A stretch of 64,000 bases of DNA from positions 124,001 to 188,000 of the IMG/VR virus record IMGVR_UViG_3300008111_000002; one strand, 5' to 3'. Each line of letters opens with the position of its first letter. Position 1 is the first letter of the stretch. The notes beneath the pieces were generated by a model. The model made no database searches. It worked only from the letters and a program-made list of their open reading frames with translations, and was not told the DNA's origin. Positions 1 to 57,194 of the stretch are shown here, piece after piece. The position numbers were made by a program, and so were the translations under genes.

Positions 1-187
1 GTTAATGACAGATACATCTAGTACTACAGCATACTTTATTAAAGAAACAATTATTCCACCGTTTCAAACGTTAAGAGCAATCAATGGTGGAGAAAAATTA
101 ATTTTAATGAGCGATAACGAAATGAAAGTTGTCAGTACAAAACCAGATTCTGTTGACGTTGTTGTAAGTTACGTAGAAATTACATAA
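1..187 (+). CDS. C-terminal part of a small virion structural protein (probably truncated by the window edge)
   Basis: Frame is open to the window start. The beta-rich end GEKLILM...SVDVVVSYVEIT resembles small fibre-associated proteins of T4-like phages. Confidence 0.5.
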   Translation, partial: LMTDTSSTTAYFIKETIIPPFQTLRAINGGEKLILMSDNEMKVVSTKPDSVDVVVSYVEIT

Positions 188-199
188 GGAATTATAAAA

Positions 200-574
200 A
201 TGAGTCAAACATATTACGTTGGCGCACCAGATCTAGGCTCAATGCTTGGTGAAGGTAATATTAGATATTTTTACGGACTTCGTCGCGATGCAGAAGGTAA
301 CATTTTTTTAAGTAAAGTTGACCAGGTCTTGGGAGACGATATAGTTCCTATTAATGTTGCCGGACCGTTTGACGAAAATTTTAATGATTTTGAATTTGGT
401 GTTGATTTTTTTGATGGTACATTAGAAGATAAAACAAAACCATACCCAAATTTATATTTTGATCAATATAAGTGGGACGAGCGTAACATTTATTATTATA
501 TCAATGAGAATGGTGAACTAGTAGCACGTATCAATAAAAAATACGATTATAGTTTAGTAGATGTTGGACAATAA
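200..574 (+). CDS. hypothetical protein (structural region)
   Basis: 124-aa ORF with AGGA RBS, lying between structural genes. Confidence 0.6.
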   Translation: MSQTYYVGAPDLGSMLGEGNIRYFYGLRRDAEGNIFLSKVDQVLGDDIVPINVAGPFDENFNDFEFGVDFFDGTLEDKTKPYPNLYFDQYKWDERNIYYYINENGELVARINKKYDYSLVDVGQ

Positions 575-577
575 ATA
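572..577 (+). promoter_or_regulatory. T4-like late promoter core (TAAATA)
   Basis: ATAAATA 21 nt upstream of the ATG at 599, followed by a GAGGA RBS; overlaps the upstream TAA stop. Confidence 0.5.
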
Positions 578-598
578 TAAAATTAACGAGGATTAACC

Positions 599-3500
599 AT
601 GGCAGAGTTTAAATTAGGTAGATTGCGTTTTGTATGGAAGAATACATGGACAACATCTACTGCATATGTTAAAGACGATATTGTAAGATATGGTGGCAAG
701 GCTTATGTGTGCGTATCAAGTCACACATCATCTGCAACCGTAGCAGGGGGCTTTTATAGCGATTTATCCACTAGATGGCAGTTAATGAATGACGGTATTC
801 AGTGGGCACAAGCGTGGGCGACCAGTACATATTATAAAGTTGCCGACGTAGTCAAGTACGGAGGCCGCGCTTATATTTGTATTACTGGTCACACTTCTGC
901 TGCTACCGCTGCACTGGGACTAGAACAAAACTCTGCCAACTGGGAAGTTTTAGTAGACGGTATTGCATTTGGCGGTGCATGGTCTTCTGCTGTAAGATAT
1001 AAAGTTAACGATGTTGTTAGTTATGGCGGACAGTTATACATCTGTAATTTACATCACACTAGTACATCAACATTTGATGTAGCTAAGTTCACATTATTTG
1101 CGTCTGGTCTACAATTTGAAGGAGCATATGCTGGAGGCACTTCATATCAACCAGGTGACGTTGTAACATACGGTTCAAACTCATATGTAGCAGTACAGAC
1201 CACATTAGGGAATTTGCCAACTGATCCAGTATACTGGACTGCAATCACAACCGGTGTTCAATTTAGAGGTGCTTACGCAGGAGGGACTGCATATAGAAAA
1301 GGTGATATTGTTAGTTTTGGAGCACATACGTTCGTTGCCAAACAAGATACCACAGGCAATGCTCCAAGTAATGCAACTTTCTGGGATACGCTTAATACTG
1401 GCTCTAAATTTAGCGGCACTTATGCCGGCGGAACAACTTATAATATTGGGGAAGTTGTTCAATACGGCGGATACCAATATATTGCAAAACAAACCACTAC
1501 AGGAAATCTTCCAACTAATGCAACCTATTGGGATGTACTAGTTAAAGGTTATACTTACGTTGGTACTTACAGTACTGCCGGTACTTATAAACCAGGTGAA
1601 TTAGTTGATTATGGTGGTAGTATCTATGCAGCCAAAGTTGATGTAGCAATTAATCAAGAACCATCAGATAATACCAAATGGGATTTATTTGCCAAAGGAT
1701 TCCAGTTTAGAGGAATATGGACAGGAGCTCCAGCACATCCGTATGTTCCAGGAGATTTAGTAAAATACGGCGGACATGTATATGTTAATATTTTAACAGC
1801 AACAAACCAAGTTCCGACAAATGCCACATATTGGACAAAATTTGTCGACGGTTTATCGTTTGTGGGAAATTACGCAAACGCTACAGCTTACAAACCAGGC
1901 GAAGCTGTTAGATACGGTGGTCGTGTTTATCTTTGTATCCTAGCGCACACATCAGATAACGCAACCAATATTGAACCACCAAATGCTACATACTGGGAAC
2001 TATTAAGTTCTGGTATGAAATGGATGGGCACTTGGAGTGCCGGCACTGAATATGATTTAGATGATGTTGTTTCATACTTACAGAGTTCGTATATTTCTAT
2101 TGTTAGTGATAATATTGGAAACGATCCAGTTTCGTCGCCCGGTTCGTGGCAGCTAGTTGCTCAAACAGGTGACTTAGGTCCTGTTTTAACAACCACGGGC
2201 GATACTTATTTTAGAAACTCGGCTGGCTCAGTAGCAAGATTACCAATTGGTACTAATGGTCAAATTTTGGTAGCCAGTGCAGCTGGAATTCCTGGATACG
2301 AAAATAATAATCAAACAGCAAATGTCTATTATGTCACTCCCGAAGGTAGTAATAGTAATAACGGCAGAACACTGAATCGTGCATTTGCATCTATTAGATA
2401 TGCCTGCACACAAGTCACTGGACCCGCAACAATTTATGTTAAGAGCGGAACTTATACAGAACAACTACCTATTGTAGTACCGGCTAGCGTTTCAATCGTT
2501 GGCGACGGTGTAAGAACTACTACTGTAACAGCAGCCGCAGGAACTAGTACAGACGGATCAACATTGAACAGTAGAACAACTATGTTCTTAATGAGTAATG
2601 CTTCGATGGTAAAAGATCTAAATTGTACAGGCATGAACGGGTTTGCAATAAGTGGCGGAACACCAACTAGTATTGAAGCAGCGACTAGAGGCGGTGTATT
2701 CTTTGCACTAAATCCTGACAGTCCTGTAACTACTAAGAGTCCATATATTCAGGATGTTACTACATTTTCTACCGCAGGCATTGGTGCGTTAATTGACGGC
2801 GGAGTTCATAATACCGGCAATAAATCAATGGTCCTAAGTAACTTTACATGTATCAACGATGGGGGTGTTGGAGTCTGGACCAGACATGCAGCTAAAGCAG
2901 AACTAGTTTCTGTGTTCACTTATTATTGTGTGTTTGGATATGCTTCATCAGACGGTGGTCAAATTCGTGCATTAAACGGTAATAATAGTTACGGAACTTA
3001 TGGATCAGCATCAGAAGGATTTGATACATTTGAAACTCCGGTGACTGGTGTATTGCATGGCGGACTAATTACATATCAAAGTATCGTTGGCGGTTCGTTT
3101 AGTCCAGGGCAGACAATTACTGGTAGTGTATCAGGAGCCACTGGAACGGTATTGAGTTCGCAAGAGGGTGTTAGCAGAATTTATTATAAAGCAGTATCTA
3201 ATACATTCCAAGCAGGCGAAACTGTTTCAAATGGTTCTGGAGTAAGCGCAGTTATTGCCACCGGCGGTGTAACAGGACAGAAAGGATTTGTATTAGCATT
3301 ATCTGGATTTAGTTCTGAACCTAGACCAGGTGGCAGTATTACAATTGCCGGCGATTCTCAACCATATATTATTCAAACGGTTGCTGATTATTCAGCAGGT
3401 GGTAGTGGTTATAAACCTGCAGGTTATGCGTTGGTAATTTTAACAACAGAAAAATTAACAGCAAGCGCAGATACTACCGCAGTTACTCTAAGATACAGAT

Positions 3501-3943
3501 TTAGTACAGTCAGACTAACAGGTCACGACTTTTTAAGTGTTGGTACCGGTGGCATTAGTACTACTAATTACCCAGGTGTTCCTTCACAAGCAGCATCACA
3601 AGTAAATGAAGTTATTGAAACATATCCGGGTCGTGTTTATTATGTTACAACAGACCAAGATGGTAATTTCAGAGTTGGTGAATACTTTAAAGTCGATCAA
3701 GCAACTGGTAAAGCAACGTTAAATGCAAGTGCATTCGATCTAAGCGGTTTGACCAGTTTAAGATTAGGTAGTATTGGAGCTCAGTTAGGTGAATTGGTTA
3801 ACGAATTTTCATCAGACACCACACTAAGCGGAAATTCAAATTCAGCAGTTCCAACAGAGGCAGCAGTTAAATCGTATGTTGATACAAACAATACGCAAAC
3901 AAACGTTAACTCGATCGCTTACGCCATTGCGTTAGGCGGATAA
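599..3943 (+). CDS. tail fibre/tailspike-like protein: 10 N-terminal carbohydrate-binding-module-like repeats, a pectin-lyase-like beta-helix and a C-terminal AIALGG
   Basis: Repeats W/Y-x4-Y-x2-GD-V-V-x-YGG-x-Y. The segment VYYVTPEGSNSNNGRTLNRAFASIRYA...TIYVKSGTYTE...VSIVGDG is typical of a beta-helix N-cap. Confidence 0.75.
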   Translation: MAEFKLGRLRFVWKNTWTTSTAYVKDDIVRYGGKAYVCVSSHTSSATVAGGFYSDLSTRWQLMNDGIQWAQAWATSTYYKVADVVKYGGRAYICITGHTSAATAALGLEQNSANWEVLVDGIAFGGAWSSAVRYKVNDVVSYGGQLYICNLHHTSTSTFDVAKFTLFASGLQFEGAYAGGTSYQPGDVVTYGSNSYVAVQTTLGNLPTDPVYWTAITTGVQFRGAYAGGTAYRKGDIVSFGAHTFVAKQDTTGNAPSNATFWDTLNTGSKFSGTYAGGTTYNIGEVVQYGGYQYIAKQTTTGNLPTNATYWDVLVKGYTYVGTYSTAGTYKPGELVDYGGSIYAAKVDVAINQEPSDNTKWDLFAKGFQFRGIWTGAPAHPYVPGDLVKYGGHVYVNILTATNQVPTNATYWTKFVDGLSFVGNYANATAYKPGEAVRYGGRVYLCILAHTSDNATNIEPPNATYWELLSSGMKWMGTWSAGTEYDLDDVVSYLQSSYISIVSDNIGNDPVSSPGSWQLVAQTGDLGPVLTTTGDTYFRNSAGSVARLPIGTNGQILVASAAGIPGYENNNQTANVYYVTPEGSNSNNGRTLNRAFASIRYACTQVTGPATIYVKSGTYTEQLPIVVPASVSIVGDGVRTTTVTAAAGTSTDGSTLNSRTTMFLMSNASMVKDLNCTGMNGFAISGGTPTSIEAATRGGVFFALNPDSPVTTKSPYIQDVTTFSTAGIGALIDGGVHNTGNKSMVLSNFTCINDGGVGVWTRHAAKAELVSVFTYYCVFGYASSDGGQIRALNGNNSYGTYGSASEGFDTFETPVTGVLHGGLITYQSIVGGSFSPGQTITGSVSGATGTVLSSQEGVSRIYYKAVSNTFQAGETVSNGSGVSAVIATGGVTGQKGFVLALSGFSSEPRPGGSITIAGDSQPYIIQTVADYSAGGSGYKPAGYALVILTTEKLTASADTTAVTLRYRFSTVRLTGHDFLSVGTGGISTTNYPGVPSQAASQVNEVIETYPGRVYYVTTDQDGNFRVGEYFKVDQATGKATLNASAFDLSGLTSLRLGSIGAQLGELVNEFSSDTTLSGNSNSAVPTEAAVKSYVDTNNTQTNVNSIAYAIALGG
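632..2160 (+). repeat. ten ~47-55 aa tandem protein repeats (CBM5/12-like)
   Basis: Ten units counted from WKNTWTTSTAYVKDDIVRYGG to WMGTWSAGTEYDLDDVVSYLQ; boundaries approximate. Confidence 0.8.
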
Positions 3944-3946
3944 ATA
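3941..3946 (+). promoter_or_regulatory. T4-like late promoter core (TAAATA)
   Basis: Overlaps the TAA of the upstream gene; AAGGA RBS follows before the ATG at 3966. Confidence 0.45.
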
Positions 3947-3965
3947 TTAAAAAGGATAGAAATAA

Positions 3966-6900
3966 ATGGCTAAGACACTAGTTTTCAATTATACATTTAC
4001 ACCGGGATCAGATTCTATCACGGTCGATGGTAACGTTTCACCTAAAAGGGTGTTGTTAATCACAAACGTTACAAAAAACATTATTTTGTTTAACTTTGCT
4101 GATACTACAAAGAAAATTATCAGTGCAACTTATAGTACTGCAAACGATACAACTACGTTTGTTTTACAATACGATTGTGCAGCAATGCTTGCTGGTGATA
4201 ATCTACAGATTTTCATTGAACAAGATTTCAACGAAATAGAACCAAGCCCGACATTTACAGATCCTGTATCTAAGATGCGTGTTTCACAACCAAACACACT
4301 TATTGATACGGACTTTGAATACGGTTTGCAATCTACCAAGTGGGAAACCGTAGAGCGCATGAATGAAGTTCCAGCGTTCCATAGCATTTTAGGTGATACT
4401 CCGTTAACAAACATTGTTGGCATCACAACCAGTGGTACAAGAATTGTAACAGTAACAACCAGTGTTGCACACGGTATTGTTACTGGTATTCCTATTGATG
4501 TAAGAGGAGTAGGTTCTCCGTCTGCTGAAGGTACATTTGTAGTTAAAAGAACTACAGATTTAACATTCACTTACGAAGCTCGTGCTGTTCAACCAGGTAA
4601 TGTTGCCGTTCCGGCTAGTATTTTTACTCCATATGTAACAATTACATTGGGTAGATTCTATGTAGGATCGCAAGTAGATTTAGATAATTCTGTTGCAAAC
4701 ACCACAGGTATGTTAGTTACTAACGGTTCTAATCCTAGTACCTTAACAGCCTACACTGAACAAAGACATGGCTTTCCAGCAAACAGTACATTCTATTTGG
4801 TAAACAGTCTTGCTAATTTAAAATTAGATTTTAATCCAGTTTCTTTAACTACAGGAACAGGCGAAGTTGACGATCGTATAACTTTAGCAGGAACAAACGC
4901 TGTGTTTACAGCCACTACTAGTACAACAACACTGACCGTTACAGTATTGACCAGTGGAGTGTTAACTATTGGATCTGTTATTACTGGTGGAACATTTACT
5001 CCGGGCTGTATCATTACTGCATTCGGTACTGGAGTAGGCGGTACTGGTACGTATACAATCAGTCAATCAAATACCAACGGTAGTGCGGTATCATATACAG
5101 CAACCAGTTACGGAACTGGCTATTTTAATCCAACTGAGCCATTCCACACCGGTTCAATCAGAAGAAATATTACTCAGCTTGATATTAACATTTCAACAGG
5201 CGTAATTACTATGGCTAAACACGGTCTAGTAACTGGAGACATGGTGGCTTATGTTGGTGTTAGCCCAGCTGGAGTGTTGCCTCAGGTCAATGCTAATGCA
5301 TCTACATGGTTCAACTATGCTGGTGGTCAAATACCACAATACGGTACTGCGGTAAGTGCTACATTGGGCAAATTTATGTTTGTTAATGTAACAGGACCAG
5401 ATACTTTCAAGTTATACATGAACCCAAAAGATGCATATGCCGATACAAGTCAATTAGTTTTTAACGGTATTGGATCAGGTACTCATACATTTGCATTGTT
5501 TAGACGCGGTACTGATGTAATTCCTAATATTGCTTCTATTGAATCAGTTAATGCAACTTCAGTTTATATTGTTACATTAACAGCTGGAAATACATGTCAA
5601 GGACTTAATATTTTTCCTAAACAGCAAATTACAGTTAGCGGGGCAGATGTTGCAGCATTAAACGGTGTATTTAGAGTTATCTCTACCAGTTTTGATAGAA
5701 ATGGCACTACTTTTAGAATGCAGGGACCAACCAATGCAGCTGGTGTTGATATCAATGCAACTGCCAGTCAAGTTTACACTGTATTAAATTCTGGTGGCAA
5801 TGGTACAACCAGTTTTAACAGATATGATGCTGTAACAGGATTCGGTATTAGAGCACAACTACATGAAGATCCGCTTTGGAATAGACATCGTGCGTCTATT
5901 GACGATTGGAGATCTAAAACTGGTAAATGGTTTACTCTGCAACACTGCGGTATTACTGCCAATAGCGATGCAATCTACATTAAAAATCACGGTTTAGAAA
6001 CTGGTGAGCCAGTAATTTTTCAAAACTATGGGCAAGCCAATAGTGGTGGAACTAACGTTCCTACAGGTGATGCAATCTATTTTGTCAATAGAGTAGACGC
6101 TGACTCATTTGAACTATTTTGGGGTGAAAACGTTTCAGTAGCAACAGGACCTTACGCCAGTGCAACTTCTGGTAGTAAACTTGACTTTAGTGCATTGACC
6201 ACAATTGCAGGCGGTTTTATGTGTATTCAGCCAGGATTTACTGTAAACACATTTACTGCAACAGCAACAGGTGGAAGCGGAGCAGCACGTGATCGTGTTG
6301 TCTGTCAATATCAAACTGTGCCAGCAAATATCTACGAAGGACAGAAAATTATTCTAAAATTAGGTGCTGGACCAAGTGCCGCGCCAACTGGCGTGACTAC
6401 CAGTGCCAATACTTTTGGTGCTTTTCAATATTACTATGTAAGAAATGTATGGACTGGTGACGGTGTTGTAGAATTTTCTATTAGCTTAACTCCTACAGGC
6501 TCACCAGTTGACTTTAGTGGCGGTACAATTACCTCTGGTGTCGGTGGCACAGGTGTTACGGGTGGCGGAAGATTTTTCTGCTGCGCAATTGATGAAAATC
6601 CATTTAGCAACAGCTTCTTCCTAGCAAATCACGGCGGAGTACAGACAAATCAACGTGTTGGAAATCTTTCAGGATCCACTGATTTAGTTACAGGAATTGC
6701 ATCACAGGGTGTATATCCTACTGGCCCAGATTATCCTGGTCCACTATTTGACACAGTAACTGATGCAACTGGTGCTAACTGGCCAAGAATTCGTACATAT
6801 CTAACACAGCCTACACAGGTTATTCCTGGATTGACCAGCGGTAGTCAGTACTACATGGTTCCAATCACCAATGATATCTTTAAGGTTCATCTGTTATCGG

Positions 6901-9900
6901 CTGCGTTACCAACAGGTAACCCAACAGTACAGTTAAGCGGAATTGTTCAAACAACTAATGCTTGTACACCAATGGCATTTACTGCACCATTTGTTCAAAA
7001 CATTTACGCCAACAGATTTGTAGTACCTATTCAAGATCAGGTGTTTGTTGATGGTGCTGTTATTCGTTATAAAAATAACGGCGGACTTGATTTAGGTAGC
7101 GGCCTGTCTGGATACCCTGGTCTTGTTAACAACACACAATATATTGTTAGAAATGTTAATAATACTATTCTATGGAATATATCTGGAACATTAAGTGCTG
7201 CAACTGCTGTTGCAACTAGTTTGACAATTACTACCAACACTGGATTAGCAATAGGTGACACTATTAAAGTAGGTACCGAGTTTATTTTAATTACTAACAT
7301 TTCAGGTACTACACTAACAGTTACCAGAGCACAACGAGCAACAACTGCTGCTGCTATTGTAGAAGGAGCATTAGTTGAAAAACTATACGGAAGTTTCCAA
7401 CTATTTGAAACAGAAGCTGGACGTAGTAGACAACTTACAGCCGGTGCCGGTGATGCTACCAACGATTGGTGGACTGTTACTACTCATAACTTAAAAGCAG
7501 GTGAAACTGTAACTGTTGCTGCAACCACAGGCGGTGTTGCTACAGGTGTTAGCGCAGGTAACGGTGTAGTTTATTTTGCAATTATCTTTAATGCGAATAC
7601 ATTTGGATTAGCATTGACACCGGCATTGGCTTATGCAGGATTCCCAATTGATATTACAACTGCAGGTACTAACTGGACATTTATACATTTCTATAATGCT
7701 GTTCCTATCCAAGGTTTAGCCAGCAGTGCTATTGACCATACTTTTGAAGATGTATCGTCTACTGGAACTTTAGATGGCGGTTATACTGCTACCAGCGTTG
7801 GAAATAATACTATTGCTTTACCGATAGGTACTACAGTTTCAAATAGAATATTCTACTTTGAACCTGCAGATTATCTACAAATGGAAACCGGTGAATTCCA
7901 AATTACAAATCATGGATTTAATACTGGTACCAAAGTAACCTACTCAAAAGGAGCATTAGCCAACGCTATTGGTGAAGGTACAGTTCCTCCAACAGGTAAC
8001 AACACTTATAATAGTCTAATCAATAATACTGCATATTATGTAATTAGAACCGGTTTAGACAGTTTCCAATTAGCAACTACCAAAGCAAATGCATTGGCAG
8101 GAATTGCTATTACTAGATTTGCAAGTTTAGGAAGTGCCGGAGCCCATACATTTACTACAGATCAGGTATTTGGCGAAAGCTTATCGGGTGGACTAGCAAC
8201 AATTGTAGCCAGAGATTTAATTGTTAACGGTAGCTCAGCAGCTACAGTGTTAGCTTCATCGGATCGTATTAATTTTACTTCACACGGTTTAGTAACTGGT
8301 GACAGAGTAATTTATAGAGTATGGGCCGGTGGTCGTGTAATTAACGGTCTGGTTGATGGACGCCAGTATTTTGTTAATAATACTGCATCTGGTGCACCTA
8401 GGGGCGGTGGTGGCGCATCAGCGGCCAACAACTTCTCTCTACACAACACTTGGGTTGGTGCGTATACCAATACAGACTTAGTTGATCTTGTTGGTGTAGG
8501 ATTGGGAACTGTTCACCAGTTTAAAGTATCGAATCCGACTCTAAGAGGAACAATTTATAGAGGCGAGTGGAACGCCAGTGATACTTATGTATACGGTGAC
8601 GTTGTTTTATATAACAACACATACTTTATGAGTTTGACTAGTGCCAACACTGGCGCCAGCCAAGTTCCTGTATCACTAACCACTAACTTGGATAATTTAA
8701 GTTGGTTAAGAGTGCCTACATTACCATCATACAGTACTAGATTCCTAGTAAGTTATAGAGGCGGCAATACTGTTAAGGTAAGTAATCAAATTCCAAAACG
8801 TACAATTTATTTTAACGCAAACACTGCACCAAGTGTTGCCAATGATACAATTACAATCACCGCTCACAGATTATTAACAGGTGACGCAGTGCGTTATGAA
8901 ATTGATGCAATTGGCGGAAATCATGCAGGAACAACTCCAGCTGTTGGTACTCAAAGTCAAGTAATTAACACTGCTGGCGCTACTTCGTATCAAACACCAA
9001 TTGGCGGATTAGTAGCTAATAGAATTTACTATGTTAACAGACAAGACGCTAATAATATTACTCTGCACAACACCTACGCTGAAGCTATCGAAGGCGGTAG
9101 TGGTGGTGGCGCAGTTGCTACACAAACAGCAGTAAATATTACAGCAGTAGCTCCAACAGGTAACGCTGCTCATAGATTTGCAGTTATTGAAAACGTAACC
9201 TATGAAATGAATGTATTGTCTGTAGTAAACGATCAAGAAATGATTGTAACTGATCCGTTTACTGCTAGACAAATTCAATTTAATCCACAGGGCAGTTTTG
9301 TTGGTGTGGCTAGCTTGCAAATTGATGTTGTTAATCTTGACACTGATGAAATTTATCTACCAGACCATAATTTATATACTGGTACAAAAGTGGTTTATAC
9401 CTTTGGTTTACCTAACAGTGGTACTGTAATGGCTGGATTAACTGATGGTACTTCCTATTATGTAATTAGAAAAACCAAGGATATCATTCAATTAGCAACC
9501 AACGAAGATAATGCATTGAGAATGATACCAGTTGATATTACAACTCGTGGTACTGGTTTCCAACATTACTTGATTGCATCAACAGTACTAGGTTCTAGCT
9601 ATATTAGATATGACAATACTGGTGCACTGACAACTAATGCACCAACAGGTACGATATTCTTTACTGGTCAACAGGGAAGTAACGTTAGAAACGGTGTGTT
9701 ATTAGCATTACCAATTATTCAGGAAACTGAATTATATGTACGTCCAGATTGTACTAATGTACATAGACCATTTGATGGCGGTGTTGAGATTAATGCATCA
9801 ACTAGTCCAAACGTAAGTATTGTACGTCAGACACGCAAGTATTTCCGCTATCAATCTGGTAAAGGGCTACAATATTCTACAGGTGTTAACTTTAGTCCAA

Positions 9901-11384: not shown

Positions 11385-11389
11385 TCAAC

Positions 11390-11416
11390 AAAAACCCCAC
11401 TTAGGTGGGGTTTTTT
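11390..11416 (+). terminator. rho-independent terminator (possibly bidirectional)
   Basis: AAAAACCCCAC-TTAG-GTGGGGTTTTTT directly after the stop at 11384. Confidence 0.9.
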
Positions 11417-11434
11417 GTTACCTTTTGATTATGA

Positions 11435-11440
11435 TAAATA
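11435..11440 (+). promoter_or_regulatory. T4-like late promoter core (TAAATA)
   Basis: GATAAATA between the terminator and the AGGTGG RBS of the gene at 11459. Confidence 0.65.
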
Positions 11441-11458
11441 ATAAAAAGGTGGGATAAC

Positions 11459-12526
11459 ATGCCAACACGTGAGATACTTGCTGCTCGATTAAGATTACTT
11501 CCTGTTAGTTTAAAAACTTTTAGGGAAGGATTTCGCGGCGAAATTACCTATGACTATGATTCAAAAACTTTAAGATTATACGACGGCGAAACTCGTGGAG
11601 GTTTTGAGTTATTACGGTCAGATCTTTCAAATCTTGGTGGTGCAACAACTAATGTAACCTTGGGTACAATTACGGCAGTTACGTCGTTGGTTGGAAATTT
11701 AGATGTAAGAAGCAACGAAAAAATTGAATTTAAAAATTCAAGTAGTCAAAATGCAGGTAGTTTAAGTTTTGACGGCACCGACTTTTTATTACATAGTACA
11801 GTTAATGCTACATCAATTAAACTTCAAAATTCATCAGGTAGTGGACTTGTACAAATAACAGAATCTGGATCGATTGTTATTAACGCCGATCAACGAGTTA
11901 GCATTGAAGGATTTTATTTTCAAAATAATCAAATTGGCGCATCAGATTCTACAACATTAGAAATAAACAGTCCTATTAGATTAAATTACGATCAAACAAA
12001 TAAAGGTAATATTTTATCTTTTACAAACAACACACTACAAATTGGTTCTAATACTAACAGATTTAATAAAATATGGATAGGTAGTGGCGGTGTTGACATT
12101 GAAACTAATATTTTAACAAAGACATCTAGTGGAAAAATTAAACCATCTGCTGGTTTTGAAACTGATGTTGCATTTGATGCCAGCGGCGGAATTAACATGA
12201 GACAATCTGGTTATAATGGAACCTCAGTAACTGGACAAACTTCTTTAGTCATTTCAACTGATGCATTTGCTAAAGGAGCAGGTCAATTAGTTTTAACAAC
12301 CACAAATGTATTAGATAATGATAGAAGATATGTGTTAGTACCGGCAGTAAATAATCAATATGCGTTAGGTAATCCAAGTTATAGATTTAAGGCTGGTTAT
12401 GTATCAGAAATTGTATTTAATGATGGTACAACACAAACAACTGCACCAGAAACTAATACGCTAGTGGCAACAAAAGTTTATGCAAATAGAAAAGCAACTG
12501 CATTAGCAATTGCATTAGGTGGTTAA
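11459..12526 (+). CDS. tail fibre protein with an Mtd-N/hyaluronidase-like N-terminal anchor and a C-terminal AIALGG
   Basis: GEITYDYDSKTLRLYDGETRGG resembles the Mtd N-terminal domain. LGNPSYRFK and FNDGTTQTTA are typical fibre motifs. Confidence 0.65.
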   Translation: MPTREILAARLRLLPVSLKTFREGFRGEITYDYDSKTLRLYDGETRGGFELLRSDLSNLGGATTNVTLGTITAVTSLVGNLDVRSNEKIEFKNSSSQNAGSLSFDGTDFLLHSTVNATSIKLQNSSGSGLVQITESGSIVINADQRVSIEGFYFQNNQIGASDSTTLEINSPIRLNYDQTNKGNILSFTNNTLQIGSNTNRFNKIWIGSGGVDIETNILTKTSSGKIKPSAGFETDVAFDASGGINMRQSGYNGTSVTGQTSLVISTDAFAKGAGQLVLTTTNVLDNDRRYVLVPAVNNQYALGNPSYRFKAGYVSEIVFNDGTTQTTAPETNTLVATKVYANRKATALAIALGG

Positions 12527-12537
12527 AGAGAAAAAAT

Positions 12538-15500
12538 ATGGCAAAAATTCAACTTAGAGAATACAGTTTTAAACCAGGTCTTTCGTATCTTAGTAATGCA
12601 AGACCAAATGCATATGATTTGCTTCTTGCAAATAAAACTTATTTAAAAAAGGAAGCAACGGCATACATCAATGCACAGGTTACTGCAAACATTGCTCCAT
12701 TTGTTGGGTATGTTTTTAATTCTGAAAAATGTGAAAGGGATGTAGGATATATCATCGATGCATATTTGTTTGATTTAAGATATGGCGGAAATGAAGAAAC
12801 TCGTCGTGTATCTTCTAAATATTGGGTAAATGATGTTCCGCAAATTGACGGCGATAGACAGGTAGAAATTCAAACACATATATTTTTAAGAGGTATAATT
12901 AACACATATATTCTTACTAATACCGCAGCACCATCGTATCAGGCAGTGGTATCGCAGGCTATTATTCCCGGAAAAATAACTGAGAATGGAACTACCGCGA
13001 GAGTAACCGAGCTTGTTGGAATTTTAACCAATGTAATTGAAAATGGATTAGGTGCCTTGCCAACAGAAGTTACCGGAGTTGGTAGACTTAAATTTCCTAA
13101 AAAATATGAACAAAATCAAATTCTTTTAATTACCAATACAACTAAAAACGAAATTATATATGATTTTAGTGACCCTACTGCAGGTGCTGTAAGAGAATTT
13201 ATTCGAGACGAAACTGACATATTTCCGAGATTGTTAGAATGGGCACAGGGTTATACACAATTAACTTTATATTACAATACCAGTACACATGCATCTACAG
13301 ATTCTATTCAAATTTTTGTTGATGAAAACGAATTAAGAACTAGACCGTATCAATTTGGTACTGATGCAATGGAGCGACAAAGAATGGCTGCTCCGCAGGC
13401 CATGCTTGATGCTGACTTTGAATACGGATTGCAGCCTACTAAATGGCAAGCCATTTCGACAACTAGAGGATATCCATCGACATACGAAATTCCGGGTAGT
13501 GATATTCTAGTTGTTTCAGTAACAACTGATGCATCATCTACTACAAATAGTATTGGCCCTAGTATAATTACAGTAAATTGTGTTAGTCCTCATTTTTTAA
13601 CAGCAGGAACACCAATTAGTATTAAAGCGTTAGCTAGCTCGGTAACTGGATTTAGTCGTGCTGAAGGAACCTTTTTAGTTAATACTACTCCAACAGCAAC
13701 ATCCTTTACCTATTTTAGTAAATCAAGAGTTGGCTCAATCTCTGGAGAAGTATTATCTACATCCTATACACAGTTGCGTGTTTCTGGATTTTATACTGGA
13801 GCAAATATTGGTGGCCCGACATTCTCTGTAGCTTCTCAAGGTAATAGCGGTAGTTTTATTACAAATTTAGATTATGTTGCAGGAGAAAATACTCTTGCCT
13901 TCACTGGGACAGCCCCACAAGTCGGTGATCCGTTAACTAGCAACTCAGCTCAATTTCAAGCAACATCAAGCGCAACAACAATATTTGCGTCTTCTCTAGT
14001 AAGTGGAAGAATAGCAGTTGGACAAAGATTAACTGGCGGTTCATTGCCTGTTGGAACTAGAATTACTGAACAACAGTATGGCGGAAATAATGATTTTGTA
14101 GTTCAAAGAACTGCAACCGGTACCAGTGGCCAGAGCACAATTGTAGTTAACTCTGCTGCTCAAATTGTTATAGGACAATTAATATCTGGCAACAATACAA
14201 CTATTGCTGGACTTCAACCAGGTACTTTTGTAAACAATATTGCTGGCACAACAATTACTCTTAGTAAAGCGTTAACAGGTAATATCAATACAACAGTGTC
14301 ATTTTATACCCCAGGCGGTATTGGCGCTTATACTACCAGTGTATCCACAAGCCTTGTTATAAGTACCCTAGTTAACGCATCTGCTTATAATGTAGGTACG
14401 CAGGTATCTGCGATAAGAGGATCTGGCGGAGTAGTTGTGACTGCGTTTGCTACACAAAACGTTGAAGTTGGAGCTACCTCTTTTACATTATTAGATGCTA
14501 ATGGAGTTTTGCCAGGACATCTTATCAATAATGGTTCAAATAGAGCGATGGAAGTTAGCTCAGTGGGCGGGAACACTGTAAGTTTTCTTTCAGGAAGAAC
14601 TACAAGATTAGTTGGATCTGATGCAAGTTATACGAATTTAGCAGGAACTTCTATAGCCAGCGATGGCGCCGGCGCAATTTCAAGATTTACAGTTAATGCA
14701 CAAAATCAATACGAATTTGCAACAGCCATTTACGAAGGCGAAAATTATGTACAAAATGATTTGTGCAAAATTAGTGGAGATACCCTAGAAGTTTACGCTA
14801 GCACAAGATTTTTGTCTAGATTTAATATTCCAGAAGGTAGGACAGCTCAAGATTCTATAGATTTTGAAAACTTATATAATGGAACTACTCCATCTACAAG
14901 TGGTGTAGGCCTATCTTACAGTCAGAAAAAATTTGGTAGAACATCAGCTCAAACAGCAAGGATTGTTGGCGGTATGATACAATACGCTGCCAGTAATGAT
15001 TATAATACGTTTGGGAATTTTAGTTTTGAAACATTCATTTATATCCAAACTATTAGCGGCTCAGGCGCAAATTATATTGTTGATCGTAGAAACACTTCTA
15101 CTGACAATACTTGGTGGATCTATGTTGATGGCACCACTGGCAATTTAGTTTTTGGCAATAGTCTTAACAGTATTACAATAACAGGCACAACCGATGTAAG
15201 AACGTTATTAAACCAATGGATCCACATTGCAGTTAATAGATTAAGTGACGAAATAAAACTATGGCTTAATGGGGTACAAGAAGGTCCTACAGCAAATGAT
15301 ACTACAAACTATCAAGGAAATACTCAATTGACATTAGGTGGTACATTTGATATTAGTAGCACTAGCGGAATTAATGCATTTTTTGACGAAACTAGATTAA
15401 GAAATGTGTCAACTTATTCTGACCCATTTACTCCGACGTCGAATCCGTTTCCAGCAGATGCTGTAGGAGCTACTCCTGCTAATGATATAACATTTAGAGT

Positions 15501-18294
15501 AGCTACAATTACATCTGGTGGCGGAATTTTAAGTGCCAGTAATATTACCGGTACACTACCGGCTGGACAATCGTTCTCGACAGGATTTATTGCTAGAGGA
15601 ACGGCAGTTGTACAAACGCCTATAGGTAATGGTGCTTCATTTAACGTGAATAGAGTTTCTGGTTCATACACAGGAATAACACTTAGCCAATCTGGGACAG
15701 GATATTTGGTAGGAAATTTAATAAGAATTCCGGAGAATTTGTTAGACGGGGAAGGAAACCAAAGTAGAAATTTAATCTTATCAGTGACTCAAATTGCTGC
15801 AGGTGGCGGTATTATATCAGTTTCGACTATCTCTGGAACTGCAAGATCAACTGGCGACCCTGTTCAATTCTTGTCTAGTATTGATATAAGTGACGGGCTA
15901 TCCGGTCCATTATTAAATGGAACTACAACAACATATAGTGCTATTGCAAAAATATTGGTAACATTTCCAAGCGGGCATGGATTAACTCCCGGATCATCAA
16001 TATCGGTAGCTATTGGTTCCGGCGGTTCTAATCATGCACTGGCTTCGGGACCTTTCTTTGTTGAAGATGTTCCGACTAAAAATACTTTAAGATATACCGT
16101 AAGATCTGCAGGACTTATTGGTACATCGCCGGGTATAACTGGATTGATCTATCCAAGAACTGATGCATTCTTCCTACATAGACCATTCGATGGAGGTGTG
16201 TTATTAAGCACAGGCACCCCAAGTCATGGTGCTCAAGCAGTACGTATGAGTAAAAAATATATTCGTTACCAGTCTGGTAAAGGTGCAATGTATACTACAG
16301 GTGCTCTTTTTGCACCTAGCTACGATATTAGAGGAATTGTTGCAGACGGAACTGCCGTAAACAGTTTAATAACAATCACCATCGATGATAACGATCACGG
16401 ATTACAAATTAAATCCGATGTAAGAATTAGTGGTGCCATAACTGTTGGATATAACGGTGACTACGAGGTTGTTGAAATCCTTGACGAACGAGTATTTAGA
16501 GTAAGAGCACAAACTCAATTAGGTAATGTAGTTGCTGAAATTGGTGCTCAGTGTCAAATGGCTCATACGGGTTGGCACGGAGCCTATGTAAGAGCTGGCG
16601 CTTTTGATGATCAAAATGGTATTTTCTTTGAATTTAATGGCGATGAAATGGCTTTGGTTAAAAGATCTAGTACTTTTCAATTAGCAGGTACTGTATCAAT
16701 GAATGTTGATTCAAATTTAGTTACCGGAAGTAACACAAGATTTAGGGATCAACTACAAGAAGGCGATAGGATTATTATTAGAGGAATGACACACTTAGTT
16801 AGTGATGTAATAAGTCAAACTTCGATGACTGTTAACCCTGACTTCAGAGGAGTTGTTAACGTAACAAATGCTAAAGTGTGTTTAATTCAAGATTATAGAA
16901 TTCCGCAATCAGAATGGAACCTTGATAAGTGTGACGGTTCAGGTCCAAGTGGTTATATCCTCGATGTAACTAAAATGCAGATGATCGGTATGCAGTACTC
17001 GTGGTACGGTGCTGGATTTATCGACTGGATGTTTAGGGGACCTAACGGTGATTATGTATTTGCACACAGATTAAAAGGAAATAACCTAAATACCGAAGCT
17101 TACATGAGAACTGGTAACTTACCTGTACGATATGAGGTGTTAAATGAGGGCGGTAGATCTAAATTAGCAGCTACAATAACATCATCTAGCACAAACCTTA
17201 CACTAAAAGATGCACAATTTTTTCCCGAGGTTGGCACAGTATATTGTGAAAATGAACTGATCAGCTATACTTCTAAGTCTGGAAATGTATTGGGAGGGTT
17301 GACTAGAGGAACATCTTATGTAAACTTTTCAGCCGGTGCTCAGCGTACATTTACTGCCGGGGCAGCAGCAGGTCATGATGCCAATGTCGGTGTAGTATTA
17401 GTTTCGTCAACAGCTAGTCCTTTAATTAGTCACTGGGGTAGTGCGTATATCATGGACGGTCGTTTTGATACAGATCGCGGATATATCTTTAACTATCAGA
17501 TCACAAATCTTGCAGTTACAAATTTAAAAACCACAGCGTTTGCAATTAGACTTGCACCCAGTGTATCAAATGCTATCACAGGAGATTTAGGAGAACGCGA
17601 GTTATTAAACAGAGCACAATTATTACTTAACTCTCTAGAAGTTGTTGGTGGTAATCCAGCATCATCGGATTCTTTTATTATTGAGGGTGTGTTAAATCCA
17701 TTAAACTATCCGTCATTGGCAGCTGATATTACATGGTTTGGTCTAACTTCAACAGCGCAAGGCGGTCAACCATCATTTGCACAAATTGCCAATGGTTCGT
17801 CAATTACGTTTGCTGGATTTGCTCCAGTGGCAGCAACTCCGACTACTGGTTTTAATACCACTCCTAAAGCTAGATTAAGATCAGCTATTTTTACTAGTAG
17901 TCAAGTAGCCGATGTAAGATTAGGATTTGTAGTTTCTGCAACTGGCGGTGTTCAGTCTGGTACTGTGGTAGAAAGAATCCAAACAGATTCTCCAGGAGCT
18001 GGCCAAACTACAATTACAATTTCCAAAGACGTCACTGCGGCTGTGTCTGGAAGTGTAACATTTACTTCACCAACATACGCACAACCGGGTGAACAGGTAT
18101 TTGCGTTTGCTTCTCCACAGGGCGTTCGCGAAGTGTTAGATCTTAGTGAACTAAAAGAATTGACTTCTACTGCAATTGGCGGAAGAGGTACATTCCCTAA
18201 CGGCCCAGACGTATTGGCAATTAACATTTATTCAACTGGTACTGCTGCTGTTACTGCTAACTTAATTTTACGTTGGGGTGAAGCGCAAGCTTAA
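12538..18294 (+). CDS. giant tail fibre/baseplate-associated virion protein (1918 aa) with a LamG/concanavalin-like domain
   Basis: Paralogous blocks shared with 3966..11384. LamG-like segment FSFETFIY...WIHIAVNR...LWLNGV...FFDETRL at about 14900-15460. Confidence 0.72.
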   Translation: MAKIQLREYSFKPGLSYLSNARPNAYDLLLANKTYLKKEATAYINAQVTANIAPFVGYVFNSEKCERDVGYIIDAYLFDLRYGGNEETRRVSSKYWVNDVPQIDGDRQVEIQTHIFLRGIINTYILTNTAAPSYQAVVSQAIIPGKITENGTTARVTELVGILTNVIENGLGALPTEVTGVGRLKFPKKYEQNQILLITNTTKNEIIYDFSDPTAGAVREFIRDETDIFPRLLEWAQGYTQLTLYYNTSTHASTDSIQIFVDENELRTRPYQFGTDAMERQRMAAPQAMLDADFEYGLQPTKWQAISTTRGYPSTYEIPGSDILVVSVTTDASSTTNSIGPSIITVNCVSPHFLTAGTPISIKALASSVTGFSRAEGTFLVNTTPTATSFTYFSKSRVGSISGEVLSTSYTQLRVSGFYTGANIGGPTFSVASQGNSGSFITNLDYVAGENTLAFTGTAPQVGDPLTSNSAQFQATSSATTIFASSLVSGRIAVGQRLTGGSLPVGTRITEQQYGGNNDFVVQRTATGTSGQSTIVVNSAAQIVIGQLISGNNTTIAGLQPGTFVNNIAGTTITLSKALTGNINTTVSFYTPGGIGAYTTSVSTSLVISTLVNASAYNVGTQVSAIRGSGGVVVTAFATQNVEVGATSFTLLDANGVLPGHLINNGSNRAMEVSSVGGNTVSFLSGRTTRLVGSDASYTNLAGTSIASDGAGAISRFTVNAQNQYEFATAIYEGENYVQNDLCKISGDTLEVYASTRFLSRFNIPEGRTAQDSIDFENLYNGTTPSTSGVGLSYSQKKFGRTSAQTARIVGGMIQYAASNDYNTFGNFSFETFIYIQTISGSGANYIVDRRNTSTDNTWWIYVDGTTGNLVFGNSLNSITITGTTDVRTLLNQWIHIAVNRLSDEIKLWLNGVQEGPTANDTTNYQGNTQLTLGGTFDISSTSGINAFFDETRLRNVSTYSDPFTPTSNPFPADAVGATPANDITFRVATITSGGGILSASNITGTLPAGQSFSTGFIARGTAVVQTPIGNGASFNVNRVSGSYTGITLSQSGTGYLVGNLIRIPENLLDGEGNQSRNLILSVTQIAAGGGIISVSTISGTARSTGDPVQFLSSIDISDGLSGPLLNGTTTTYSAIAKILVTFPSGHGLTPGSSISVAIGSGGSNHALASGPFFVEDVPTKNTLRYTVRSAGLIGTSPGITGLIYPRTDAFFLHRPFDGGVLLSTGTPSHGAQAVRMSKKYIRYQSGKGAMYTTGALFAPSYDIRGIVADGTAVNSLITITIDDNDHGLQIKSDVRISGAITVGYNGDYEVVEILDERVFRVRAQTQLGNVVAEIGAQCQMAHTGWHGAYVRAGAFDDQNGIFFEFNGDEMALVKRSSTFQLAGTVSMNVDSNLVTGSNTRFRDQLQEGDRIIIRGMTHLVSDVISQTSMTVNPDFRGVVNVTNAKVCLIQDYRIPQSEWNLDKCDGSGPSGYILDVTKMQMIGMQYSWYGAGFIDWMFRGPNGDYVFAHRLKGNNLNTEAYMRTGNLPVRYEVLNEGGRSKLAATITSSSTNLTLKDAQFFPEVGTVYCENELISYTSKSGNVLGGLTRGTSYVNFSAGAQRTFTAGAAAGHDANVGVVLVSSTASPLISHWGSAYIMDGRFDTDRGYIFNYQITNLAVTNLKTTAFAIRLAPSVSNAITGDLGERELLNRAQLLLNSLEVVGGNPASSDSFIIEGVLNPLNYPSLAADITWFGLTSTAQGGQPSFAQIANGSSITFAGFAPVAATPTTGFNTTPKARLRSAIFTSSQVADVRLGFVVSATGGVQSGTVVERIQTDSPGAGQTTITISKDVTAAVSGSVTFTSPTYAQPGEQVFAFASPQGVREVLDLSELKELTSTAIGGRGTFPNGPDVLAINIYSTGTAAVTANLILRWGEAQA

Positions 18295-57118: not shown

Positions 57119-57194
57119 AAAAATAAAAGAATACATTAAAAGAAAACGTAGATTAAAAGAACTACGTAAAAGAGATCCGTTTATCTATAAATGA
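57102..57194 (+). CDS. 30-aa basic microprotein MFRLIEKIKEYIKRKRRLKELRKRDPFIYK (absent from the ORF track)
   Basis: AAGGA RBS at 57091, ATG 57102; stop overlaps the carbamoyltransferase start (ATGA). Confidence 0.7.
   Translation: MFRLIEKIKEYIKRKRRLKELRKRDPFIYK

What the first reader, a model, noticed from the sequence alone, without database searches (positions are those of the whole stretch)
599..18294. Two tandem fibre modules, each an AIALGG-terminated protein followed by a giant paralogue: possible peptide-docking code for branched receptor-binding proteins
Seen: two otherwise dissimilar proteins (1114 aa CBM/beta-helix; 355 aa Mtd-N-like) end in nearly the same hydrophobic peptide, SIAYAIALGG (~3911-3943) and ATALAIALGG (~12494-12526). 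Each is immediately followed by a giant protein starting MAK with a shared N-terminal domain (LLITNxTKNxIxxxFxD...DxxQIFxE/D). Inference: the C-terminal peptide is a docking tag bound by the N-terminal domain of the next gene product, so fibres can be hung on different anchors. The terminal Gly-Gly also leaves open a covalent or processing role.
Basis: partly seen in the sequence, partly recalled or inferred. Interest (0 to 1): 0.62.

Follow-up and report, generated by a model that had tools for sequence, protein, structure and literature searches.

The report
Portable C-terminal plug on phage fibres
Two unrelated tail-fibre proteins of a marine T4-like phage end in the same short greasy peptide, and each sits just before a giant fibre gene; the same pairing recurs across many related phages and probably marks a plug-and-socket joint, though binding has not been shown.

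Summary
P0001 (599-3943) and P0003 (11459-12526) are unrelated except for a shared ...AIALGG end. Each is followed by a giant paralogue with a shared N-terminal beta domain; in P0004 a ~170-aa insertion splits that domain.

The pattern generalises. In 78 related viral loci, 56 have an ORF just upstream of the giant ending in [AS][IV]A[LYF][AS][IV]AL(G). Another 15 carry variant hydrophobic tails. The regex hits 47/76 upstream ORFs against 16/1695 other ORFs. The tail sits on about 18 unrelated protein bodies (62 to 1755 aa).

The reverse survey adds a correction. Genes ending AIALGG are usually followed by an uncharacterised ~107-aa protein (64/77) and less often by the giant (5/77). The tail is therefore a general plug with at least two partner families, not a code specific to this N-domain.

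Gly-Gly is not conserved (6/52), which argues against Gly-Gly chemistry. No physical binding is shown, and the one complex prediction gave no verdict.

Best reading: a portable beta-strand plug that docks adaptor or fibre proteins to the next gene's product. It is a new variant of known modular fibre assembly.

The parts
1..187 (+). C-terminal part of a 109-aa 'small family' protein. It starts 142 nt before the window, at genome 123858-124187. This is the second kind of partner that follows tail-bearing fibre genes.
   Evidence: HMM of the small family, E 3.4e-16. It is preceded, 3 nt upstream, by a 503-aa fibre ending ...EKVIQLG.
599..3943 (+). P0001, a 1114-aa tail-fibre protein with CBM5/12 repeats and a conserved fibre C-module ending in ...VKSYVD plus the tail.
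   Evidence: Pfam CBM_5_12 E 3e-47; phrog_9851 tail fiber, 1031 bits.
3911..3940 (+). Tail 1: SIAYAIALGG, a C-terminal plug with period-2 alternation of large apolar and small residues.
3966..11384 (+). P0002, a 2472-aa giant virion structural protein. It has an N-terminal beta domain, a conserved linker, 8 HG-x-x-G-x-x-V beta-barrel modules and a C-terminal ConA-like jelly roll.
   Evidence: phrog_5838 E 4e-166
3966..4235 (+). N-terminal ~90-aa eight-stranded beta-sandwich of P0002, the candidate socket.
   Evidence: AF2 pLDDT above 90 for aa 1-90. No Pfam family. Only weak Ig-like structural matches, Z about 5-6.
4260..4346 (+). The most conserved block of the family (aa 99-127: D-P-V-S-K-x-R-V-S ... 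D-T-D-F-E-Y-G-x-Q-x-T-K-W). It is modelled with low confidence as a monomer.
   Evidence: Invariant columns; pLDDT 46-64.
9723..11381 (+). C-terminal conserved domain of P0002 (aa 1920-2472). Its core has a concanavalin-A-like lectin/glucanase fold, and it ends W-K-E-S-Q-A.
   Evidence: AF2 mean pLDDT 78.6. GH16, PL7 and lectin matches at Z 11-13.6 over 155-180 residues.
11390..11415 (+). Intrinsic-terminator-like hairpin (11 bp stem plus T run) separating module 1 from module 2.
11459..12526 (+). P0003, a 355-aa fibre or adaptor with a weak Mtd_N-like N-terminus and the tail.
12494..12523 (+). Tail 2: ATALAIALGG.
12538..18294 (+). P0004, a 1918-aa giant paralogue of P0002.
   Evidence: phrog_5838 E 9e-277
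12580..13086 (+). Insertion of about 170 aa (aa 15-183) that splits the N-domain of P0004 after its first strand.
   Evidence: The N-domain HMM matches aa 185-336 from HMM position 19. The first 14 aa match the family start. The insertion hits fibre PHROGs. The same insertion occurs in L101, L121 and L150.
14995..15399 (+). Laminin_G_3 (ConA-like) domain inside P0004.
   Evidence: Pfam E 3e-9, 37.6 bits against cutoff 27.6.
16138..18291 (+). C-terminal conserved domain of P0004 (aa 1201-1918), ending W-G-E-A-Q-A.

Best explanation
The window holds two co-transcribed adaptor-plus-giant fibre modules of a T4-like marine myovirus of the Kyanoviridae type. Each upstream protein ends in a portable 8-9-residue peptide, [AS]-[IV]-A-[LYF]-[AS]-[IV]-A-L-(G). 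The strict alternation of large apolar and small residues is that of a beta-strand buried on both faces. I infer that this strand is a plug bound by the product of the next gene. Here that product is the giant virion protein, most likely through its conserved N-terminal ~150 aa (beta-sandwich plus invariant linker). In many other phages and loci it is a free-standing ~107-aa beta protein. The body of the upstream protein supplies the other function and is freely exchanged. It can be an Mtd_N anchor, CBM repeats, a collagen-like shaft or a beta-helix. The giant carries a ConA-like, probably glycan-binding, C-terminal domain. Because tails within one genome are nearly identical, correct pairing may depend on the tight adjacency of the two cistrons (median gap 22 nt) rather than on a peptide code. 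Shown: the motif, its enrichment, its portability, and the fold predictions of the two giant domains. Inferred: physical binding, the binding site, the stoichiometry, and which partner is proximal to the virion.
For: Both window tails precede paralogous giants. They are the only such ORF ends in the 210-kb genome. In 78 loci retrieved only by the N-domain, 56 have canonical and 15 variant hydrophobic tails on the ORF just upstream, and 3 of the 7 exceptions have a tail-bearing mini-gene one gene further up. The strict regex hits 47/76 against 16/1695, p 2e-58, and the 16 'background' hits are themselves tail genes followed by the small family. Bodies with canonical tails fall into 18 BLAST-unrelated clusters, with at least 21 swaps on the N-domain tree. 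The smallest are 62-aa proteins that consist of Mtd_N plus the tail. Variant tail classes are confined to one well-supported N-domain clade. In the unbiased reverse survey, 69 of the 77 AIALGG+TAA matches with a downstream ORF are followed within about 40 nt by the small family or the N-domain giant. Of 24 small-family genes in loci not chosen by tail, 21-22 follow a hydrophobic ...LG tail. There is no terminator inside either module but a strong one between them. The giant's N-domain is a confident independent fold. Its C-terminal core is a ConA-like jelly roll. Homologues in isolates are annotated as virion structural proteins in S-CAM1 and S-PM2.
Against: There is no direct evidence of binding; the only complex prediction gave no verdict and counts neither way. 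The N-domain is modelled as a complete beta-sandwich without the peptide, so no missing strand is evident. The two partner families show no detectable sequence similarity, which makes a single shared socket uncertain. Some giants have no tail gene upstream (S-PM2 p176; L073, L077, L079, L081). A few AIALGG-ending proteins are followed by a gp13-like neck gene and not by a partner. Adjacent genes are co-inherited, so the counts overstate the number of independent events.
Confidence: 0.55

Rival explanations
1. The tail is an autonomous C-terminal folding or trimerisation nucleus, analogous in role to the T4 fibritin foldon. It registers the three chains of any fibre. Its position before the giant or small gene reflects inheritance of fibre cassettes, not binding.
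For: Many trimeric fibres need a C-terminal nucleus (established knowledge of T4 fibritin). The tail follows the common fibre motif K-x-Y-V-D in P0001, P0003 and S-CAM1. The same module continues into more fibre in a 1458-aa paralogue of the same genome. Tails within one genome are not discriminating. A few tail-bearing proteins have no partner gene downstream.
Against: A pure folding element would not need a particular downstream gene. Yet about 90% of AIALGG ends are followed by one of two families. Bodies are swapped at least 21 times while the tail-plus-partner junction is kept. A tail of 9 residues is short for a self-sufficient nucleus.
Confidence: 0.2
2. The downstream product acts as an assembly chaperone or cap for the upstream fibre's C-terminus. 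This would resemble Tfa proteins or gp38-type proteins encoded downstream of fibre genes, rather than a fibre hung on an adaptor.
For: The gene order (fibre, then helper) matches the known Tfa and gp38 arrangement (established knowledge). The commonest partner is a small ~107-aa protein of unknown function.
Against: The window partners are 1918 and 2472 aa and belong to a family annotated as virion structural proteins. There is no Pfam or PHROG hit to known Tfa or chaperone families. A stable cap would still be a form of docking.
Confidence: 0.12
3. The terminal Gly-Gly has a chemical role, either ubiquitin-like conjugation or cleavage at a double-glycine site.
For: Both window proteins, and all proteins found by the AIALGG pattern, end in GG. 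The pattern search selected for that ending.
Against: In the survey not selected on the tail, GG is the ending in only 6 of 52 unique tails; G, S, GS, A and no extra residue are as common or commoner. No E1-like enzyme or peptidase partner was seen beside the modules.
Confidence: 0.03
4. The conservation lies at the DNA level (promoter, ribosome-binding site or coupling signal for the next gene), and the peptide is a by-product.
For: At the P0001/P0002 junction the last Gly codon plus the stop form GGATAAATA, a late-promoter-like motif 26 nt before the P0002 start.
Against: The two window tails differ at 4 of 6 synonymous positions. The gap to the next start ranges from 2 to 99 nt. The amino-acid pattern is kept across loci with very different codons. 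The P0003/P0004 junction has no such DNA motif.
Confidence: 0.03

Closest known systems
Anchor-branch receptor-binding protein systems of Klebsiella podophages (KP32, K11, KP34): a branching domain on RBP1 binds a conserved docking peptide on RBP2 (PMC6872550; PMC13352976).
   Same: A short conserved peptide on one fibre protein is thought, and there shown, to dock on a conserved domain of the protein encoded by the neighbouring gene. This allows modular exchange of receptor-binding parts.
   Different: In that system the peptide is N-terminal on the second protein and the socket is a T4gp10-like domain in the first. Here the peptide is C-terminal on the first gene and the candidate socket is N-terminal in the second. 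There is no sequence relation and no T4gp10-like domain was detected. Binding is not demonstrated here.
T4 long tail fibre joints (gp34-gp35-gp36-gp37) and gp38-type adhesins or Tfa proteins encoded downstream of fibre genes.
   Same: Gene order mirrors assembly order. The C-terminal end of one fibre protein contacts the product of the next gene.
   Different: No homology to these proteins was found by PHROG or Pfam. Those systems are not known to share one portable C-terminal peptide across unrelated proteins (my knowledge, not tested here).
Donor-strand complementation in chaperone-usher pili.
   Same: Both have a terminal strand in which large hydrophobic residues alternate with small ones. 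That pattern would fit insertion into a partner beta-sandwich.
   Different: The giant's N-domain is modelled as a complete sandwich without the peptide. There is no evidence for a groove or an incomplete fold. This is a mechanistic analogy only.
T4 fibritin foldon (C-terminal trimerisation nucleus).
   Same: Both are short hydrophobic C-terminal elements on trimeric fibres.
   Different: The foldon is about 27 aa and self-sufficient, and it is not tied to a downstream gene. Here the element is 9 aa and is tightly coupled to two downstream families.

Membership tests
Giant 'virion structural protein' family of T4-like cyanophages (phrog_5838) | Significant match to the family profile | tested here: met
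   P0002 E 3.9e-166; P0004 E 9.4e-277.
Giant 'virion structural protein' family of T4-like cyanophages (phrog_5838) | N-terminal domain with L-I-T-N-x-T and D-x-D-F-E-Y-G blocks, plus a C-terminal domain ending W-x-E-[SA]-Q-A | tested here: met
   Both giants carry both features. All 60 complete relatives but one truncated ORF end this way, one of them in ...QG. Relatives occur in 123 isolate genomes, mostly Synechococcus and Prochlorococcus phages.
Carbohydrate-binding module 5/12 (PF02839) in P0001 | Score above Pfam gathering cutoff | tested here: met
   158.7 bits against 26.2; 5 repeats.
Mtd_N (PF18454) in P0003 | Score above Pfam gathering cutoff | tested here: inconclusive
   P0003 aa 26-45 scores only 13.2 bits, E 0.089. 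The 62-aa tail-bearing relative in L017 scores 58.6 bits against cutoff 26.3. P0003 clusters with those minis by BLAST.
Klebsiella-type anchor-branch RBP system | T4gp10-like branching domain in the first RBP and an N-terminal conserved peptide in the second | tested here: not met
   No such domain in the Pfam or PHROG scans of P0001-P0004. The conserved peptide is C-terminal on the first gene.
Tail fibre assembly or chaperone proteins (Tfa, gp38-like) | Profile match of the downstream product to a known chaperone or adhesin family | tested here: not met
   No match for the giants' N-regions or for the small protein. No PDB relatives.
Ubiquitin-like or double-glycine C-terminal chemistry | Conserved terminal Gly-Gly | tested here: not met
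   GG in 6 of 52 unique tails from the unbiased survey.
Donor-strand complementation | Alternating hydrophobic donor strand | tested here: met
   Positions -6, -4, -2 and 0 are I/V, L/Y/F, I/V and L. Positions -7, -5, -3 and -1 are A/S.
Donor-strand complementation | Acceptor domain with an incomplete fold or groove that the strand fills | tested here: inconclusive
   The N-domain is modelled as a confident 8-strand sandwich on its own. The complex prediction gave no verdict.
Concanavalin-A-like lectin/glucanase fold (C-terminal domain of the giants) | Structural match of the domain core | tested here: met
   GH16, PL7 and legume-lectin chains at Z 11-13.6, 155-180 residues, rmsd 2.7-3.6. This is fold only; no catalytic residues were checked. 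P0004 also has a Laminin_G_3 Pfam hit.

The most novel reading that the evidence does not exclude
A universal plug-and-socket system builds the still unknown fibre apparatus of marine T4-like phages (cyanomyoviruses, pelagimyophages) and some other phages. A 9-residue C-terminal beta-strand is transferable onto any protein body. It is captured by at least two unrelated socket proteins encoded immediately downstream: a ~107-aa free-standing protein, or the N-terminus of giant lectin-tipped fibres. Pairing fidelity would come from cistron adjacency and not from sequence specificity. This would be a previously undescribed assembly principle and a ready handle for swapping receptor-binding modules.
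Probability: 0.4. Interest if true: 0.78.

Novelty: new variant of a known kind. Interest (0 to 1): 0.62.

Why it matters
The tail-fibre apparatus of marine T4-like cyanophages and pelagiphages is largely unassigned. Homologues of the T4 long tail fibre genes are missing, and reviews point to unexplained virion proteins as candidates (PMC2984593). A conserved, portable C-terminal peptide tied to the next gene gives a concrete rule for which proteins join to which. It suggests a role in fibre assembly for two abundant families with no assigned function: the giants' N-domain and the ~107-aa protein. It also explains how very different adaptors, from 62 to 1755 aa, can carry the same giant lectin-tipped fibre. 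If binding is confirmed, the architecture of these fibres becomes predictable from sequence. Host-range evolution by module exchange in ocean phages would then be directly testable in cultured isolates such as S-CAM1.

Tried and rejected
- Complex prediction of P0002(1-240) with the last 40 aa of P0001, 1:1, using my own alignments: no verdict (score 0.01, mark 0.32). This counts neither for nor against binding.
- Homology between the ~107-aa partner family and the giants' N-domain: hhalign shows no similarity in any mode. The nearest language-model clusters differ.
- Known fold or function for the N-domain: Foldseek against PDB found nothing at E <= 0.001. VIA-align gave only generic Ig-like matches at Z about 5-6 for aa 8-86. 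The second domain (aa 143-229) resembles the phi92 endosialidase beta-barrel, Z 10.5.
- PDB sequence searches with the N-region profile, the C-terminal domain, the tail profile and the small protein gave nothing useful.
- Megablast of the region and tblastn of P0003 against 50,697 phage records found no match. P0003 has only three relatives in IMG/VR.
- A literature search for the peptide string found no phage paper. No structure paper on fibres of T4-like marine cyanophages was found.
- S-CAM1's homologue of P0001 lacks the canonical tail, and I considered it as a natural control. I rejected it because the gene that follows looks like a distant small-family member by eye but does not pass the HMM.
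- I considered a read-through or frameshift fusion of tail gene and giant and rejected it. The two gene pairs are in different frames (gaps of 22 and 11 nt), and gaps in other loci follow no frame rule.
Full report
**What the window is.** The window is bases 124001-188000 of a 209.8-kb IMG/VR virus record. Its genes include a T4-type tail sheath, tube, large terminase, gp32-like SSB and UvsX. The giants' relatives lie almost only in Synechococcus and Prochlorococcus myoviruses. It is therefore a T4-like marine myovirus of the Kyanoviridae type. No near-identical record is in the phage collection.

**The observation.** Four + strand ORFs fill 599-18294.
- P0001 (1114 aa) has five CBM5/12 repeats and matches a tail-fibre PHROG. 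It ends SIAYAIALGG.
- P0003 (355 aa) ends ATALAIALGG.
- Apart from these ends the two proteins are unrelated.
- The shared six codons differ at four third positions.
- No other ORF of the 210-kb genome ends this way.
- After gaps of 22 and 11 nt come P0002 (2472 aa) and P0004 (1918 aa). They are paralogues of phrog_5838, with a shared N-terminal region and a shared ~570-aa C-terminal region.
- In P0004 the N-domain is split. The first strand (aa 1-14) is followed by a ~170-aa insertion, also seen in three related loci, before the rest of the domain.

**Does it generalise? Forward survey.** I searched IMG/VR with an alignment of the N-domain only and obtained 80 loci out of more than 560 relatives. 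For each locus I read the ORF just upstream. I corrected five cases where an overlapping spurious ORF had been picked.
- Of 78 informative loci, 56 have an upstream protein ending in the canonical peptide.
- Fifteen end in variant hydrophobic peptides: Y-P-F-x-x-x-T-I-A-L-G-D (7), M-G-M-M-A-A-x-G-W (4) and P-L-N-M-M-F-type (4).
- Seven have none. Three of those carry a tail-bearing mini-gene one gene further upstream.
- A strict regular expression hits 47 of 76 upstream ORFs against 16 of 1695 other ORFs of at least 60 aa in the same loci (Fisher p 2e-58).
- The 16 background hits are genuine tail genes too. Ten of the twelve checked are followed by a ~107-aa (or longer) protein beginning M-A-N-x-F.

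**The tail logo.** From 52 unique tails the logo is [AS]-[IV]-A-[LYF]-[AS]-[IV]-A-L, followed by G (17), S (7), GG (6), GS (4), A (4) or nothing (4). The perfect period-2 alternation of large apolar and small residues is that of a beta-strand buried on both faces. That reading is inference. The median gap to the giant's start is 22 nt.

**Portability.** With the last 14 residues removed, the upstream proteins that carry canonical tails fall into 18 BLAST-unrelated clusters. They range from 62 aa to 1755 aa. On a tree of the N-domains the body cluster changes at least 21 times while the tail is kept. The smallest bodies are a bare Mtd_N domain (58.6 bits) plus the tail. The variant-tail and no-tail loci lie mostly in one well-supported clade of short (~950-1100 aa) giants. 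This is compatible with co-evolution of tail and N-domain, but also with shared descent.

**Reverse survey.** A pattern for A-I-A-L-G-G followed by TAA was scanned over IMG/VR.
- About 75 of the matches are true ends of ORFs with at least 50 open codons.
- Among the 77 with a downstream ORF, the next gene is the ~107-aa family in 57, a longer fusion of that family in 7, an N-domain giant in 5, a gp13-like neck protein in 3, and other in 5.
- The small family is phrog_1276, function unknown, with no Pfam family.
- It occurs in Pelagibacter phage Mosig, Methylophilales phage Melnitz, Roseobacter, Bordetella and Synechococcus phages.
- In loci not chosen by tail, 21-22 of 24 small-family genes follow a hydrophobic ...L-G tail.
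- The window's own genome has one small-family gene. It straddles the window start (genome 123858-124187) and follows a 503-aa fibre.

The dominant partner, however, is a different family. That family shows no detectable similarity to the N-domain.

**What the giants are.**
- AF2 with a 74-row alignment models aa 1-90 of P0002 as a confident eight-stranded beta-sandwich.
- Next comes the family's most conserved block (aa 99-127), at low confidence.
- Then comes a beta-barrel like that of the phi92 endosialidase (Z 10.5). P0002 holds eight such H-G-x-x-G-x-x-V modules.
- The C-terminal 553 aa (45-row alignment, pLDDT 78.6) has a concanavalin-A-like lectin/glucanase core. It matches GH16, PL7 and legume-lectin chains at Z 11-13.6.
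- P0004 carries an additional Laminin_G_3 domain.
- Every complete relative but one truncated ORF ends W-x-E-[SA]-Q-A, or ...QG in one case.

These features fit long, glycan-binding fibres. The fold alone does not prove that function.

**Operon structure.** A strong terminator-like hairpin (11390-11415) separates the two modules, and none lies inside a module. The heptamer ATAAATA occurs only three times on the + strand of the first 19 kb. Each copy lies 26-31 nt before the start of P0001, P0002 or P0003. The heptamer resembles the T4-type late promoter core; that comparison is my knowledge, not tested here.

**Mechanism.** The best-supported reading is a plug-and-socket joint. The tail of the upstream protein is held by the product of the next gene, so that interchangeable adaptor or fibre bodies are coupled to a conserved partner. 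The evidence is comparative only. Three points weaken a strict 'code':
- The two window tails are nearly identical although their giants' N-domains are only 28% identical.
- Genomes hold both partner families behind similar tails.
- The N-domain folds without the peptide in the model.

The Gly-Gly idea is not supported. A DNA-level explanation is unlikely, given the synonymous variation and the variable spacing. At the first junction, though, the final Gly codon and the stop do form part of the promoter-like motif.

**Comparison with known systems.** The closest concept is the anchor-branch system of Klebsiella podophages, where a conserved docking peptide of the second receptor-binding protein binds a branching domain of the first (PMC6872550; validated in PMC13352976). 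Here the polarity is reversed, the sequences are unrelated, and no T4gp10-like domain is present. The T4 fibre joints, and the gp38 and Tfa proteins encoded downstream of fibre genes, share the gene-order logic but show no homology. I found no paper that mentions this peptide in phages. I found no structural work on the fibres of T4-like marine cyanophages. A 2010 review notes that the missing tail-fibre proteins of these phages may be among unexplained virion proteins (PMC2984593).

**Verdict.** I rate it a new variant of a known kind of system, of moderate to high interest.

Noticed in passing
window 571-577, 3940-3946, 11434-11440 (+): ATAAATA occurs only three times on the + strand of the first 19 kb. 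Each copy lies 26-31 nt upstream of the start of P0001, P0002 or P0003. It resembles the late-promoter core of T4-like phages. The second copy overlaps the last Gly codon and the stop of P0001 (GGA TAA ATA). None precedes P0004.
   Followed up: partly
window 11390-11415 (+): A strong intrinsic-terminator-like hairpin (11-bp stem, T run) lies right after the P0002 stop. The two modules therefore look like separate transcription units.
   Followed up: partly
window 1-187 and genome G000:C1:119582-124187 (just upstream of the window): The fibre cluster continues upstream of the window. A 418-aa protein ending ...ALLWSMLF is followed by a 194-aa protein. Then come a 497-aa fibre ending ...YTIIFG, a 503-aa fibre ending ...EKVIQLG, and a small-family protein. 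The order small protein, short ORF, P0001-like fibre is shared with Pelagibacter phage Mosig (L207).
   Followed up: partly
window 4260-4346 (P0002 aa 99-127): The most invariant block of the whole giant family (D-P-V-S-K-x-R-V-S ... D-T-D-F-E-Y-G-x-Q-x-T-K-W) is the worst-modelled part of the N-region (pLDDT 46-64). It may need a partner or oligomer to fold. It is an alternative candidate for the tail-binding site.
   Followed up: no
window 11364-11381 and 18274-18291; loci L012-L086: Every complete member of the giant family but one truncated ORF ends in the motif W-x-E-[SA]-Q-A (one ends ...QG). This is a second conserved C-terminal peptide, of unknown role.
   Followed up: no
window 4470-9400 (P0002 middle): Eight copies of a ~90-aa beta-barrel module are marked by H-G-x-x-T-G-x-x-V. 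The first is modelled like the beta-barrel domain of the phi92 endosialidase (Z 10.5). P0004 has far fewer. The length difference between family members (941 to 2472 aa) lies in this array.
   Followed up: partly
genome G000:C1:71-4447 (outside the window): A 1458-aa fibre carries the same C-module as P0001 (53% identity over 144 aa, up to ...Y-I-D). It continues into more fibre instead of ending in the tail. This shows that the tail replaces a downstream shaft.
   Followed up: partly
window 57191-58660 (+): A Nol-like carbamoyltransferase gene (phrog_1601, E 6.5e-101). In S-CAM1 a homologous gene, together with sugar-modifying genes, lies right beside the tail-plus-giant module. This may hint at fibre or host glycan modification.
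   Followed up: no
L020:5571-5955; L040:5087-5985; L066:5074-5981: Some loci have two tail-bearing mini-genes in tandem before the giant. Others have a ~215-aa gene inserted between the tail gene and the giant. These are variants that a simple one-plug-one-socket model does not explain.
   Followed up: no
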